A stretch of 64,000 bases of DNA from Octopus sinensis (taxonomy: Eukaryota), in contig NC_043009.1 of the NCBI RefSeq assembly GCF_006345805.1, forward strand, positions 58,714,001 to 58,778,000, given 5' to 3'. Shown here one piece after another: positions 29,484-32,187 of this stretch. The position numbers and the translations under genes are program-made. Within the stretch, counting starts at the first letter, position 1. Every line of letters begins with the position of its first letter. Under the pieces are notes generated by a model. The model ran no database searches, was not told the origin of the DNA, and saw nothing but the letters and a program-made list of their open reading frames with translations.

Positions 29484-29554
29484 TTTGCAGGAGTGGCTGT
29501 GTGGTAAGTAGCTTCTTAGCAGACAGACGTGTTGTTTTTTGCTCCGGCAAACGT

Positions 29555-29948
29555 CACGTGTTAACGGGAATTTTTGAACTTTCGACTCAACTAAAGGTAG
29601 GAATTTTGTATTTTTGCGGGCGAAGTGAAGTTTTATTGCTTGCATGAATGTTTTTTAGCATTAAATATTTTTTAGCAAGTAATAAGGCTCCACTTTGCTC
29701 CAGATATAATTTTTCTGCCTGTGTCGAGTGAAAAGAAAATTGTATTGATGTCGCGTTGTTTCAACGTGAAATATTGAACTTTCGTCTCGACTACGGGTAG
29801 GCGTTTTGTATTTTTGTGAGTTTAGTGAAGTTTTATTACTTGCATGAATGTTTTTTTAGCATTTAATATTTTTTTAGCAATAATGAGGCTCCACTTTGCT
29901 CCGGATATAATTTTTCTGCCTGTGTCGAGTAAAAAGAAATTGTATTTT
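29555..29948 (+). repeat. Two tandem 200-bp monomers in the 5' region of the ORF1-only element
   Basis: GAACTTTCG at 29576 and 29776; shared GGCTCCACTTTGCTCC..GATATAATTTTTCTGCCTGTGTCGAGT. Confidence 0.9.
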
Positions 29949-30263
29949 TGAAGCGGCATAGTCCGTCTGAAAAAATTATTGTTGAAATTGTCGTTGTGTT
30001 GTCCACGGATTACCAAGGATTATTTACCAAGGGTTTTACCAAGTGCATTTGGCCTGGATTACAATTTTTGGCCGAAGAAGTGGAAAAAAAAAAAATTAAT
30101 TCCTTTGTCTGAATTGAACTCTCTTTCTCTGTCTATTATTTATTTGTAAAAACTTTTTTGAACTGCCATTTTTAATTTTATTTCTTCCCTTCTGTTGCAT
30201 TTTTTCATTCTCCTTTCTGTGGCTAATTTTAGTTTATCATTTTGAACTGTTGTATTTTATGTT

Positions 30264-31478
30264 ATGGCAAAGGCAAAGAATTTCACTGTGTGGGAATTAA
30301 CACCTCCCAAAAAATATTTGCACGAACTCGAGGAAAAGACCGTGGTGTTGAGGACATATTCAAAGTCACTCGACAGCATAATGGTTTTTCCGAGAGACAC
30401 CATTGTGAACGAGCTGGCAGACTATATGCCAGCCGTTAAACATATTCAACGGGGAGTCAAATACGCAACGGTATGGTTGCTATTTGACTCCGCTAAAGCA
30501 GCTTGCAAATTTGCAAGCCAGTCCATTGAGGGCGATGAGATTCTGTTTCTCCCCAGTTACAAGGGGGAAAAATTGTTACGTTTATGGGTCTGTGGCCTGC
30601 CGCCCGGCTTTGAGCCCGAGTGGCTAGAATACTCTATCCGCCGGGGTCTGGGTGACAGGAACGCAAAGATCCTCAACGTCAAAATGCAGCCTGCGGATAA
30701 CTGGGAAGGGTCAAAGGCCACTTTGACTCTGTGGACCCAGTCGGCCAAGAGTCTGGTTTTGCCAGACTTCTTGAAGATGGCCGGATCCAAGTATCCGGTG
30801 ATGCTTGAGGGACGCGCCCCCACGTGTCACCTTTGTTCGGAGACCGGCCACATCAAGAAGAGATGCCCCAGGGACCAGAGTAGGATCCTGGAGCGGCTGA
30901 TATCAGAGCCTCTCCCTGCCCCACCAGTGGAGGGAGAGAAACAAAGTGAGGAGGGCGAAAAATCCTCCTCCAAAAAAAAGAGAAAGGTGGGGAGCAATGG
31001 CGACCCACCAAAGGACCCGAAAGCTCCGGGAGAGGAGAACCCGGTGCGCACAGCTCCGGAACCTCAGCCTCCCGTGGCCCAGGGCCAGAAGAAAAGAAAA
31101 AAAAAGAGAAACGGAGCCCCGCCGGCGGATTGCTACACGCAGACGGCGGTTCCCGAGTATCTCCGGTCCTCTCAGGCGGGTGTGCCGCCTGAGGGACTAT
31201 TTGTAGAAGATTTTGTGCTCCTCTTTTTCAAGGGAAAAAAGGTGGAAGACGCCGTCAGAAAAGTGAGAAAGAGAGGCCATTGGGAGGTAATCCGGTCTTG
31301 TGTGGAAAACCCCGAGTGGCCTTCGCAGTTAGCTGCGGGGGTCGTGGGAAGGGTTGATCTACACGGGATCGTGAGTTCCTACCTGGCGGACTCTTTCCAG
31401 ACCATACCACTGGACTCCGGCCTGACCAGCGAGTATTGCCTCAATGAGGCAAGAGCAATGGTCGGCCGGGTCACTTAG
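30264..31478 (+). CDS. 404-aa gag/ORF1-like nucleic-acid-binding protein with a CCHC zinc knuckle
   Basis: Uninterrupted, GC-rich, non-repetitive ORF; CHLCSETGHIKKRC (CX2CX4HX4C) at 30825-30866; K/P/E-rich linker with KKKRK and KKRKKKR basic clusters. Confidence 0.85.
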   Translation: MAKAKNFTVWELTPPKKYLHELEEKTVVLRTYSKSLDSIMVFPRDTIVNELADYMPAVKHIQRGVKYATVWLLFDSAKAACKFASQSIEGDEILFLPSYKGEKLLRLWVCGLPPGFEPEWLEYSIRRGLGDRNAKILNVKMQPADNWEGSKATLTLWTQSAKSLVLPDFLKMAGSKYPVMLEGRAPTCHLCSETGHIKKRCPRDQSRILERLISEPLPAPPVEGEKQSEEGEKSSSKKKRKVGSNGDPPKDPKAPGEENPVRTAPEPQPPVAQGQKKRKKKRNGAPPADCYTQTAVPEYLRSSQAGVPPEGLFVEDFVLLFFKGKKVEDAVRKVRKRGHWEVIRSCVENPEWPSQLAAGVVGRVDLHGIVSSYLADSFQTIPLDSGLTSEYCLNEARAMVGRVT

Positions 31479-31912
31479 GCGATGTAACATCCTTGTAACA
31501 TATGGAAGAGGAGGTTCATTGCCTCCTCTAAAATATGTAATGTGAACATTTTGTAATTTTTCGAAATTTTTTGAATTTTTTGAAATTTTTGAACTCTGTA
31601 AAATTATTGAAAAAAGAACATTGTTTTAGAGAAGTAAAAGTCGACGGGCGCTTTCTGACTTCTCCCATCACCATCTTCATCCACCGCCACCATCATCCAT
31701 TAATGTCTGTGTCCAGCCCGGAGCTACTGCTACCTCTGTGTGATGCCCTAGTGGCAAATTATTGAAATAAAGTAGCTTGCTAACCAACCGCATGATTCTG
31801 GGTTCAGTCCCACTGCGTGGCATATTGGGCAAGTGTCTTCTGCTATAGCCCCGGGCCGACCAATACCTTGTGAGTGGATTTGGCAGACGGAAACTGAAAG
31901 AAGCCTGTTGTA

Positions 31913-31972
<60 letters not shown>

Positions 31973-32187
31973 TGTATGTTGTATGTCTGTGTTTGTCCCC
32001 CCAACATCGCTTGACAACCGATGCTGGTGTGTTTATGTCCCCGTCACTTCGGCAAAAGAGACCGATAGAATAAGTACTGGGCTTACAAAAAGAATAAGTC
32101 ACGGGGCTGAGTTGCTCGACTAAAGGCGGTGCTCCACCATGGCCGCAGTCAATGACTGAAACAAGTAAAAGAGTAAAAGAGTAAAAG

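What the first reader, a model, noticed from the sequence alone, without database searches (positions are those of the whole stretch)
29515..31769. ORF1-only retroposon (HAL1-like) with an intact zinc-knuckle gene and a clean TSD
Seen: a 2255-bp insert bounded by a perfect 9-bp duplication (AAGTAGCTT) that splits a SINE, proving it moved as one unit. It has about 750 bp of 5' region, one intact 404-codon ORF with a CCHC knuckle, about 290 bp of 3' UTR ending at AATAAA, and no RT, endonuclease, LTR or TIR. Established: L1/Tx1-clade ORF1 proteins have RRM-like plus CCHC domains, and HAL1 (half-L1) elements are non-autonomous retroposons that keep only ORF1. Inference: a young non-autonomous family that encodes its own RNA chaperone and borrows RT in trans. 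It is the only intact complex ORF in 64 kb, so it is either very recent or under selection. I know of no description of such a family in cephalopods but could not search.
Basis: partly seen in the sequence, partly recalled or inferred. Interest (0 to 1): 0.88.

Follow-up and report, generated by a model that had tools for sequence, protein, structure and literature searches.

The report
ORF1-only LINE derivative in an octopus SINE
This is a 2.25-kb octopus jumping gene that kept the RNA-binding gene and both ends of an L1/Tx1-type LINE but has no reverse transcriptase, so it probably moves by borrowing the enzyme of a complete relative; it resembles mammalian "half-L1" elements and may aim at one fixed spot in a common octopus SINE.

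Summary
A 2255-bp insert (29515-31769) lies between two perfect copies of AAGTAGCTT, and the joined flanks rebuild an octopus SINE. The insert has a 749-bp 5' UTR with two ~200-bp monomers, one intact 404-codon ORF and a 291-bp 3' UTR. It has no RT, endonuclease, LTR or TIR.

The ORF is a type I LINE ORF1 protein: two RRM folds (AlphaFold pLDDT >90; Foldseek hits to tandem-RRM proteins) followed by a CCHC knuckle. Its distant relatives (~17-27% identity) come almost only from octopods. Several are ORF1 of two-ORF LINEs whose ORF2 has APE, RT and zf-RVT domains and best matches human L1 ORF2p. The 3' UTR and 3' terminal motif are shared with those LINEs.

So the element is an ORF2-less L1/Tx1 derivative that works like HAL1. 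Family status is not shown: only one close relative was found, a decayed O. sinensis copy (59% aa identity, dN/dS 0.26). The TSD does not exclude loss of ORF2 after insertion. A separate ORF1-only family does exist in O. vulgaris, with two colinear copies.

The O. sinensis copy follows the same SINE head, with its junction 1-4 nt from the window's. That suggests Tx1-style target specificity. Interest is moderate.

The parts
29487..29514 (+). 5' head (28 nt) of the SINE copy that the insertion split
   Evidence: Aligns to the heads of other SINE copies in the window.
29506..29514 (+). Target-site duplication, left copy (AAGTAGCTT)
   Evidence: The 9-mer is part of the SINE consensus.
29515..31769 (+). 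The inserted element (2255 bp): 5' UTR, ORF1, 3' UTR, with no ORF2
29515..30263 (+). 5' UTR (749 bp), partly homologous to the 5' region of the O. sinensis copy L001; shares short motifs with the 5' ends of the two-ORF LINEs L002 and L004
   Evidence: Alignment A2. Motifs TTTCAACGTG and GACGTGT…CTCCGG seen by eye.
29563..29946 (+). Two tandem ~200-bp monomers (87% identical), a candidate internal promoter region
   Evidence: The promoter role is inference, by analogy with L1 monomers.
30264..31478 (+). Intact ORF of 404 codons plus stop: a type I ORF1 protein
30339..30560 (+). RRM-like fold 1 (aa 26-99; order strand-helix-strand-strand-helix-strand)
   Evidence: AlphaFold2 pLDDT >90; Foldseek hits to tandem-RRM proteins at E about 1e-5.
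30567..30806 (+). RRM-like fold 2 (aa 102-181)
30822..30869 (+). CCHC zinc knuckle (aa 187-202)
   Evidence: Pfam zf-CCHC E 0.011, below the curated cutoff. The family profile matches nucleocapsid and ZCCHC8 knuckles in the PDB.
30906..31118 (+). Pro/Lys/Glu-rich linker (about aa 215-285), predicted disordered
   Evidence: Low pLDDT.
31119..31475 (+). C-terminal 119 aa with no detectable homologue apart from a frameshifted stretch of the O. sinensis copy
31479..31769 (+). 3' UTR (291 bp), with no poly(A) tail
31549..31612 (+). Array of 9-10-nt repeats (TTTTGAAAT) in the 3' UTR; its first 48 nt (31549-31596) are 85% identical to the 3' UTR of the two-ORF LINE in L004
   Evidence: E 1.6e-8, matching both tandem LINE copies at the same relative position.
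31733..31769 (+). Conserved 3' terminal motif CCTCTGTGTG..GCCCTaGTGGC.AAT…AA, shared with L002, L003 and L004
   Evidence: Alignment A5.
31770..31778 (+). Target-site duplication, right copy
31779..32180 (+). Remainder of the split SINE (body, TA microsatellite, tail)

Best explanation
The insert is a non-autonomous derivative of an L1/Tx1-type non-LTR retrotransposon of octopods. It keeps the LINE's 5' UTR (with two ~200-bp monomers), its ORF1 and its 3' UTR, and has lost ORF2 completely.

Proposed mechanism. Shown: the anatomy, the homology and the target duplication. Inferred: everything else below.
1. The element is transcribed from its own 5' UTR.
2. Its ORF1 protein (two RRMs plus a CCHC knuckle) coats the RNA in cis.
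3. An endonuclease/reverse transcriptase (ORF2p) supplied in trans by a complete L1/Tx1 LINE recognises the shared 3' end (…GCCCTnGTGGC.AATAA…).
4. ORF2p nicks the target and copies the RNA by target-primed reverse transcription. This gave a 9-bp duplication and no poly(A) tail.

The target is the tRNA-like head of the abundant octopus SINE. The only close relative sits at the same SINE position, so the lineage is probably target-specific, as many Tx1-clade elements are. In function it is an analogue of mammalian HAL1 and Drosophila HeT-A, both of which are ORF1-only elements.
For: Insertion:
- A perfect 9-bp TSD and a gap-free rebuilt SINE.

The ORF is a LINE ORF1:
- An exhaustive HMMER search gave 73 relatives matching aa ~10-280. 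All of the 15 that carry a source name are octopod.
- The fold is two RRMs plus a knuckle, which is the definition of type I ORF1p (PMC5203782).

The relatives are ORF1 of real LINEs:
- L002 and L004 carry a downstream ORF2 with Exo_endo_phos, RVT_1 and zf-RVT domains. Its best PDB match is human L1 ORF2p (E 2e-71).
- L005 shows an ORF2 start just after ORF1.
- The window ORF aligns to the intact L004 ORF1 at 24% identity over 176 aa (E 6e-19).

Shared UTRs:
- 48 nt of the 3' UTR are 85% identical to the L004 LINE 3' UTR.
- The terminal motif is conserved in four elements.
- The 5' monomer is homologous in L001.

ORF2 is absent:
- No tblastn or tblastx signal and no ORF2-start vestige.
- The 3' UTR (291 nt) is at least as long as the complete 3' UTRs of the two-ORF relatives (~230-255 nt). 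The missing piece therefore matches ORF2 closely.

The ORF1-only design does propagate in Octopus:
- L003 and L006 lie on two O. vulgaris chromosomes with unrelated flanks. They are colinear ORF1-only units with no ORF2 nearby. L003 has a probable ~19-bp TSD.

Selection and source of enzyme:
- dN/dS is 0.26 against the O. sinensis copy.
- Possible trans enzyme sources exist: 13 recently active L1-Tx1 families in O. vulgaris (PMC13282606), and an intact ORF1+ORF2 LINE in L004.

Target:
- L001 has the same SINE head (24/24 nt identical) in the same orientation. Its junction lies 1-4 nt from the window's, and its upstream flank is unrelated.
Against: - No second copy with the same ORF1-to-3'UTR junction was found. 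Family status and mobilisation as an ORF1-only RNA are therefore unproven for this lineage.
- The one close relative (L001) is frameshifted and truncated after the equivalent of aa ~327. It cannot show whether it ever had ORF2, and it has no 3' junction.
- No progenitor two-ORF LINE with a similar ORF1 (above 30% identity) was found.
- The C-terminal 119 aa match nothing, including the conserved C-terminal motif of related ORF1 proteins.
- The 3' end shows no significant predicted RNA structure (z = -0.7).
- The window holds no RT source.
- Target specificity rests on two copies only.
Confidence: 0.62

Rival explanations
1. One-off deletion. A full-length two-ORF L1/Tx1 LINE inserted into the SINE and made the 9-bp TSD. 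A later genomic deletion removed ORF2. On this view the element never moved as a 2.25-kb unit and founds no family.
For: - A TSD only marks the original insertion event.
- No other copy with this architecture was found.
- Several relatives are ordinary two-ORF LINEs.
Against: - The missing segment matches ORF2 closely. ORF1 is intact to its stop, the 3' UTR is full length, and no ORF2 remnant remains. A random deletion would rarely do this.
- ORF1 is still open (P about 1e-8 by chance).
- ORF1-only units demonstrably propagate in Octopus (L003/L006).
Confidence: 0.22
2. Domesticated gene. The ORF is a host gene derived from a LINE ORF1 (as L1TD1 is in mammals) and is kept by selection for a cellular role. 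It is not a mobile element.
For: - The ORF is intact.
- dN/dS is 0.26.
- G+C and CpG are high relative to the surroundings.
- The O. sinensis homologue is annotated as a gene, with a spliced model overlapping it.
Against: - The ORF sits inside a SINE with a perfect TSD and still carries LINE 5' and 3' UTRs.
- The O. sinensis homologue is at a locus with unrelated flanks. It has lost the first knuckle cysteine (Cys to Phe), is frameshifted and is truncated.
- dS of about 1.15 far exceeds the orthologous divergence expected between Octopus species (about 0.1-0.24, from the rates and dates in PMC13282606).
- dN/dS below 1 is also expected along active transposon lineages.
Confidence: 0.08
3. Processed retrocopy of a spliced host mRNA, the refuting scenario the first reader named.
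For: A single intronless ORF with a TSD.
Against: - No poly(A) tail.
- The UTRs are homologous to LINE UTRs.
- The protein family is ORF1 of LINEs.
Confidence: 0.02

Closest known systems
HAL1 (half-L1) of mammals (Smit 1999; Bao & Jurka 2010, as cited in PMC5753468)
   Same: A LINE derivative that keeps ORF1 and the UTRs, lacks ORF2, and depends on the parent clade's ORF2p. HAL1 arose several times independently. Here, too, at least two unrelated ORF1-only lineages appear (the window lineage and L003/L006).
   Different: - HAL1 derives from mammalian L1, which has a type II ORF1p (coiled coil, RRM, CTD; Transposase_22), and has poly(A) tails. This protein is type I (two RRMs plus CCHC), has an orphan C-terminus, and the element has no poly(A) tail.
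- HAL1 families are multi-copy. This lineage is known from one intact and one decayed copy.
- The host is a cephalopod.
Tx1-clade target-specific LINEs (Tx1 in Tx1D, Keno in U2 snRNA genes, Kibi/Koshi in microsatellites, crocodilian Tx1-Mar in Mariner-N4; PMC4494074)
   Same: - L1-superclade relatives with RRM/CCHC ORF1 proteins.
- Insertion into other repeats. Relative L002 is flanked on both sides by (ATT)n, and L004 forms head-to-tail arrays.
- The window element and L001 share one SINE position.
   Different: - Those elements are autonomous (ORF1 + ORF2). This one has no ORF2, so clade placement by RT phylogeny is impossible.
- I found no described Tx1 target in the tRNA-like head of a SINE.
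Drosophila HeT-A-type telomeric elements (ORF1/Gag-only; PMC13534243)
   Same: An ORF1-only non-LTR element that needs RT in trans and is target-restricted.
   Different: HeT-A belongs to the Jockey clade, has a different Gag architecture, targets chromosome ends, and has a host-beneficial role.
L1TD1 and similar domesticated ORF1-derived genes (PMC4161310)
   Same: An ORF1-derived protein-coding sequence without ORF2, under purifying selection.
   Different: L1TD1 is a syntenic host gene without transposon ends. This ORF has LINE UTRs, a TSD and a non-syntenic, decayed relative.

Membership tests
L1/Tx1-superclade non-LTR retrotransposon (as a derivative) | ORF1 protein of type I: at least one RRM plus a CCHC knuckle | tested here: met
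   AlphaFold2 model with two RRM folds (pLDDT >90) and Foldseek hits to tandem-RRM proteins. C-x2-C-x4-H-x4-C knuckle. Definition from PMC5203782.
L1/Tx1-superclade non-LTR retrotransposon (as a derivative) | ORF2 with APE endonuclease and reverse transcriptase | tested here: not met
   Absent from the element and from the whole window. Present next to homologous ORF1s in L002 and L004, with an ORF2 start in L005. The element is therefore a derivative, not an autonomous member.
L1/Tx1-superclade non-LTR retrotransposon (as a derivative) | Insertion with a target-site duplication and no LTRs or TIRs | tested here: met
   9-bp TSD with a rebuilt SINE. No terminal repeats.
L1/Tx1-superclade non-LTR retrotransposon (as a derivative) | 3' end shared with autonomous elements of the clade | tested here: met
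   85% identity over 48 nt to the L004 LINE 3' UTR (E 1.6e-8). Conserved terminal motif in L002, L003 and L004.
L1/Tx1-superclade non-LTR retrotransposon (as a derivative) | Placement within the Tx1 clade, rather than L1 proper, by RT phylogeny | not testable with these tools
   The element has no RT. For the relatives no reference RT set was available. Their ORF2 best matches L1 ORF2p in the PDB, and L1-Tx1 is the only L1-like group listed for O. vulgaris (PMC13282606).
HAL1 (half-L1) | Keeps ORF1 and the UTRs and lacks ORF2 | tested here: met
HAL1 (half-L1) | ORF1p of the mammalian L1 type (Transposase_22: coiled coil, RRM, CTD) | tested here: not met
   Pfam finds only a weak zf-CCHC hit and no Transposase_22. 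The fold is RRM-RRM-knuckle.
HAL1 (half-L1) | A multi-copy family amplified as ORF1-only units (same internal junction, different TSDs) | tested here: inconclusive
   Only one close relative among 5.8e9 and 1.84e9 proteins, and none in metagenome contigs. No octopus genome could be searched by DNA. A different octopus lineage (L003/L006) does meet this feature.
Target-specific Tx1-type element | Independent copies inserted at the same target sequence | tested here: inconclusive
   Two of two copies follow the same SINE head, with junctions 1-4 nt apart, the same orientation and unrelated outer flanks. n = 2, and L001 lacks its 3' junction.
Domesticated ORF1-derived host gene (L1TD1-like) | A conserved syntenic locus without transposon ends | tested here: not met
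   LINE UTRs and a TSD are present. The only homologue has unrelated flanks and is decayed, and dS is about 1.15. Full synteny across genomes could not be tested.

The most novel reading that the evidence does not exclude
An old, very low-copy lineage of ORF1-only retroposons has persisted in octopods under purifying selection. The two copies are dS ~1.15 apart, with dN/dS 0.26. The lineage carries its own C-terminal domain. It inserts at one fixed nucleotide position in the tRNA-like head of the dominant octopus SINE. It would be a parasite of a parasite, combining HAL1-like dependence on a foreign ORF2p with Tx1-like site specificity.
Probability: 0.25. Interest if true: 0.7.

Novelty: new variant of a known kind. 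Interest (0 to 1): 0.5.

Why it matters
ORF1-only LINE derivatives bear on an open question: what ORF1 proteins contribute, given that ORF2p alone can mobilise SINEs. HAL1 and HeT-A are the standard examples.

An independent origin of this design in Tx1-like LINEs of a mollusc, seen here in at least two unrelated lineages, would show that it is a recurrent evolutionary outcome and not peculiar to mammals or flies.

An intact copy with a defined 3' recognition motif, plus intact candidate partner LINEs, gives a system in which cis and trans preference could be tested. If the shared SINE position holds up, it adds a new target class (a SINE head) to Tx1-type site specificity. It would also matter for reading octopus repeat landscapes, where SINEs and LINEs each make up more than 10% of the genome.

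Tried and rejected
- ORF2 remnant in the element. tblastn of ORF2 pieces from L002 against the window, tblastx of 31050-31769 against L001-L004, and local alignment of 31381-31560 to the first 150 nt of ORF2 from L002 and L004 (all 74 nt available from L005) gave nothing above shuffles. My impression of a 'CLN…' ORF2 start at the ORF's C-terminus was chance.\n- C-terminal 119 aa compared with the conserved C-terminal motif (Y..LK..FP.DVG) of related ORF1 proteins. hhalign probability 0.2%.\n- Sequence search of the family profile against the PDB. Only the zinc knuckle matched; the RRMs needed the fold comparison.\n- Conserved RNA structure at the 3' end. Folding 31680-31769 gave z = -0.7. A 3-bp stem with two compensatory changes among four sequences is only a lead.\n- Orthology of the window locus and L001. 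Rejected because the flanks are unrelated and dS is about 1.15, while the SINE head is 24/24 identical.\n- More copies. A scan of metagenome contigs found none. An exact-protein look-up of the window ORF found nothing on record. The P0003 locus is not on record.\n- tRNA detection in SINE heads with ARAGORN found none.\n- Two BLAST runs were swamped by TA-microsatellite hits. I used only the non-repeat rows and repeated the run with masking.\n- The species of the window was not determined. Its SINE copies are up to 92.5% identical to O. vulgaris copies.
Full report
**1.

The 9-mer AAGTAGCTT lies at 29506-29514 and 31770-31778, with exactly 2255 bp (29515-31769) between the copies. The bases just outside the two copies differ, so the duplication is 9 bp.

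The 9-mer belongs to the host repeat. It recurs in three other copies of the same SINE in the window. The 28-nt left flank joined to the right flank aligns without a gap to other copies, for example 94.9% over 175 nt to 32956-32782. The SINE is abundant, with about a dozen copies in the 64 kb.

The insert contains:
- a 749-bp 5' region with 1.9 tandem copies of a 200-bp unit at 87% identity;
- one ORF, 30264-31478, of 404 codons, with C188-x2-C191-x4-H196-x4-C201;
- a 291-bp 3' region that ends …TTGAAATA directly against the TSD, with no poly(A) tail.

There are no terminal direct or inverted repeats, and no reverse transcriptase or endonuclease homology anywhere in the window. At this composition a 404-codon open frame has a chance probability near 1e-8. 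All other long ORFs in the window are microsatellite, low-complexity, SINE-derived or an untested LINE-like fragment. The ORF is 54% G+C in a 36% window, with CpG observed/expected of 0.73.

**2. What the protein is**

Pfam sees only a sub-threshold zinc knuckle. The word-indexed search of 5.8 billion proteins found one relative, P0001. It is an 'uncharacterized protein' of Octopus sinensis, 281 aa, 59% identical over aa 1-278.

An exhaustive HMMER search of 1.84 billion cluster representatives with the two-sequence profile found 73 proteins at E <= 1e-3. All but P0001 are distant, about 17-27% identical in the family alignment. They match aa ~10-280, which covers the N-terminal domain, the knuckle and part of the linker. 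All of the 15 that carry a source name are octopod: O. bimaculoides, O. vulgaris, O. sinensis and Argonauta hians.

With 45 of these sequences as an alignment, AlphaFold2 models aa 10-220 at pLDDT above 90. The model shows two consecutive strand-helix-strand-strand-helix-strand domains followed by the knuckle. The rest of the protein is modelled at low confidence. Foldseek against the PDB returns tandem-RRM proteins (SFPQ/NONO, hnRNP A1 UP1, IMP3 RRM12) at E about 1e-5.

RRM plus CCHC is the definition of type I ORF1p, the kind found in plant L1 and in Tx1-type elements (PMC5203782).

**3. The relatives are ORF1 of real LINEs**

- L002 (O. sinensis): the related ORF (P0008) is followed by a frameshifted ORF2 with an Exo_endo_phos domain, RT motifs and zf-RVT.
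- L004 (O. vulgaris): P0007 lies in a head-to-tail array of LINEs. One array member has an intact 503-aa ORF1 and an intact 1132-aa ORF2 with Exo_endo_phos, RVT_1 and zf-RVT. Its best PDB match is human LINE-1 ORF2p (E 2e-71).
- L005, a 1.9-kb Logan contig: ORF1 is followed by an ORF2 start.

The window ORF aligns to the intact L004 ORF1 at 24% identity over 176 aa (E 6e-19). L1-Tx1 is the only L1-like group in the recent O. vulgaris repeat annotation, with 13 families and 421 recently active insertions (PMC13282606). I therefore place these LINEs in the L1/Tx1 superclade. Placement in Tx1 proper is inference.

**4. The untranslated regions are LINE UTRs**

The window's 3' UTR (31549-31596) is 85% identical to the 3' UTR of both tandem LINE copies in L004, at the same relative position (E 1.6e-8).

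The last ~37 nt (CCTCTGTGTG..GCCCTaGTGGC.AAT…AA) are conserved in L002, L003 and L004. Each element ends a few bases after an AATAA, with no poly(A) tail.

The 5' monomer is recognisably homologous in the O. sinensis copy L001. Short motifs (TTTCAACGTG; GACGTGT…CTCCGG) recur at the 5' ends of L002 and L004 (seen by eye).

The element is therefore an L1/Tx1-type LINE without ORF2. It is not a processed host mRNA.

**5. Was it ORF1-only when it moved?**

The TSD proves one insertion event, not the length of what was inserted.

Three things favour mobilisation as a short unit:
- No trace of ORF2 remains.
- ORF1 is open to its stop, and the 3' UTR (291 nt) is at least as long as the complete 3' UTRs of the two-ORF relatives (about 230-255 nt). 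The missing piece thus matches ORF2 closely, which a random genomic deletion would rarely achieve.
- The design propagates in Octopus. L003 (P0009) and L006 (P0013) lie on two O. vulgaris chromosomes with unrelated flanks. They are colinear from a short 5' UTR through ORF1 and about 0.5-0.9 kb of 3' UTR to the shared 3' end. They are 65% identical in the ORF and about 80% near the 3' end. Neither has ORF2 on the element's strand downstream, and L006 has none within 6 kb on either strand. L003 has a probable ~19-bp TSD directly after the conserved 3' motif.

That pair is an ORF1-only family, but a different one, about 21% identical in protein to the window ORF.

For the window's own lineage I could not find a second copy with the same junction, and I could not search octopus genomes by DNA. 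I put mobilisation as an ORF1-only RNA at roughly 0.6 and deletion after insertion at roughly 0.2.

**6. The one close relative**

L001 (O. sinensis) shares the 5' monomer and the ORF (71.6% nt identity). It is decayed in three ways:
- The first knuckle cysteine is Phe.
- The frame shifts in the lysine/A-rich run after aa 278.
- Homology continues in another frame to the equivalent of aa ~327 (score 53 against shuffles of 24.8 ± 3.9, 0 of 500 shuffles reaching it) and then stops.

Nei-Gojobori estimates over 278 codons give dN 0.30, dS 1.15 and dN/dS 0.26. The protein was therefore under purifying selection along the path joining the two copies. That is expected for an active transposon lineage and does not by itself indicate a host gene.

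A dS of 1.15 is far above the neutral divergence expected between Octopus species. That is about 0.1-0.24, from the rate and dates in PMC13282606 (my arithmetic). The two loci are therefore not orthologues.

The C-terminal 119 aa have no other homologue and do not match the conserved C-terminal motif of related ORF1 proteins. Their codon-position G+C pattern resembles that of the rest of the ORF.

**7. A shared target**

In L001 the element is preceded by a genuine SINE 5' end (…ATAGGCTGAGGCATGGCTGTGTGGTAAGTAGCTTG|CTTCC…). This matches the window's SINE head at 24 of 24 nt, in the same orientation. The junction lies 1-4 nt from the window's (…GTAAGTAGCTT|CTTAGC…), and the DNA upstream of the SINE is unrelated.

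With dS of about 1.15 between the elements, a neutral flank inherited from one ancestral insertion could not stay 24/24 identical. These are therefore separate SINE copies hit at the same place. Alternatively, the head was carried along from a master copy that itself sat at that place.

For random insertion I estimate the chance of such a coincidence at about 1e-3. That takes the SINE fraction as ~5-10%, halved for orientation, times about 9/450 positions. It is a post hoc estimate.

Many Tx1-clade elements are target-specific, including for other transposons (PMC4494074). Among the relatives, L002 is flanked on both sides by (ATT)n and L004 forms head-to-tail arrays. Target specificity is thus plausible, but it rests on n = 2 and one missing 3' junction.

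**8. Mechanism**

Shown:
- the anatomy;
- ORF1 identity and fold;
- homology of the UTRs to autonomous LINEs;
- absence of ORF2;
- a 9-bp TSD within a SINE.

Inferred:
- transcription from the monomeric 5' UTR;
- cis binding of the RNA by the RRM-RRM-knuckle protein;
- recognition of the conserved 3' end by ORF2p from a complete L1/Tx1 LINE acting in trans;
- target-primed reverse transcription starting at a bottom-strand nick opposite GGT|AAG.

Age: a perfect 9/9 TSD is a weak bound. An intact 1.2-kb ORF under neutrality would argue for only a few million years (my estimate), unless selection maintains it.

**9. Comparison and novelty**

The element works like HAL1 (ORF1-only, dependent on the parent's ORF2p, recurrent origins; PMC5753468) and like HeT-A-type elements (PMC13534243). 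It is a member of neither. Its ORF1p is type I, not Transposase_22, there is no poly(A) tail, and multi-copy status is unproven.

My full-text searches found no description of ORF1-only LINE derivatives in cephalopods. This does not exclude entries in repeat libraries.

I rate it a new variant of a known kind, of moderate interest. The more striking reading is an old, selected, SINE-site-specific ORF1-only lineage. It is not excluded, and I give it about 0.25.

Noticed in passing
L003:9925-11651 and L006:~5950-7770 (O. vulgaris OX597833.1 and OX597815.1): Two colinear ORF1-only units (P0009 379 aa; P0013 257 aa, truncated), with no ORF2 nearby and unrelated flanks. L003 has a probable ~19-bp TSD (TGCTGGGTTCG.CTA.CTCT). 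Together they form an ORF1-only family distinct from the window's lineage.
   Followed up: partly
L004:4623-9456, with repeats to ~19200 (O. vulgaris OX597840.1): A head-to-tail array (period ~5.3 kb) of L1/Tx1-like LINEs. One member has an intact 503-aa ORF1 and an intact 1132-aa ORF2 (APE + RT + zf-RVT), so it is possibly active and a candidate source of enzyme in trans.
   Followed up: partly
L002:9728-9778 and 15347-15380 (O. sinensis CM016872.1): A ~5.6-kb two-ORF LINE flanked on both sides by an (ATT)n microsatellite. This suggests microsatellite-targeted insertion like the fish Tx1 elements Kibi and Koshi.
   Followed up: no
L004:~11425-11440; L005:1846-1856; L003:11152-11160; L006 (alignment A6 columns ~1343-1351): A perfect 5' splice-donor consensus (AAG|GTAAGT) lies immediately before the ORF2 ATG in the two-ORF LINEs. 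It is retained after the ORF1 stop in the ORF1-only copies. Whether splicing plays a part in losing ORF2 is unknown.
   Followed up: no
window:29515-29528: The first 14 nt of the element (CTTAGCAGACAGAC) match the reverse complement of the SINE head at 12 of 14 positions (16 of 19 with the palindromic AGCT of the TSD). They may be snap-back or extra nucleotides from the 5' junction. The O. sinensis copy does not show this.
   Followed up: partly
window:29197-29486: A 290-bp palindrome (133-nt arms, 86% complementary, 24-nt spacer) ends exactly where the split SINE begins. It may be a foldback or MITE-like element.
   Followed up: no
window:28976-29084 (- strand): A reverse-oriented SINE copy whose head (positions 1-37) is joined directly to the last ~65 nt of the tail. 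This internal deletion starts a few bases from the position where the ORF1-only element inserted in the neighbouring copy. Its head forms a 28-nt inverted repeat with 29487-29514.
   Followed up: no
window:31744-31754 and the homologous positions in L002, L003, L004 (alignment A5): A 3-bp stem with a 5-nt loop (GCC-CTAGT-GGC) in the conserved 3' motif shows two compensatory pair changes among four elements (C-G in L004 at pair 1, G-C in L003 at pair 2). This is too few sequences to count as evidence.
   Followed up: no
window:15696-16559: A satellite of 183-bp units, 4.7 copies, 95% identical. It is read through by a 237-aa ORF that is probably spurious.
   Followed up: no
window:8214-8546: A 110-aa ORF that resembles the C-terminal tail of a LINE ORF2 (…RGRTLSYSDVISRDTG…DREVWR…). 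It is presumably a fragment of an unrelated LINE. It was not tested.
   Followed up: no
L001:3129-20846: The O. sinensis annotation has a second, spliced gene model (280-aa product) spanning the decayed ORF1 copy. This hints that the locus is transcribed.
   Followed up: no
L001:2-640: The C-terminal end of another L1/Tx1-like ORF2 (43% identical to that of L002), with a 3' end …CATAATAAAGAAAT about 9 kb upstream of the decayed ORF1-only copy.
   Followed up: no
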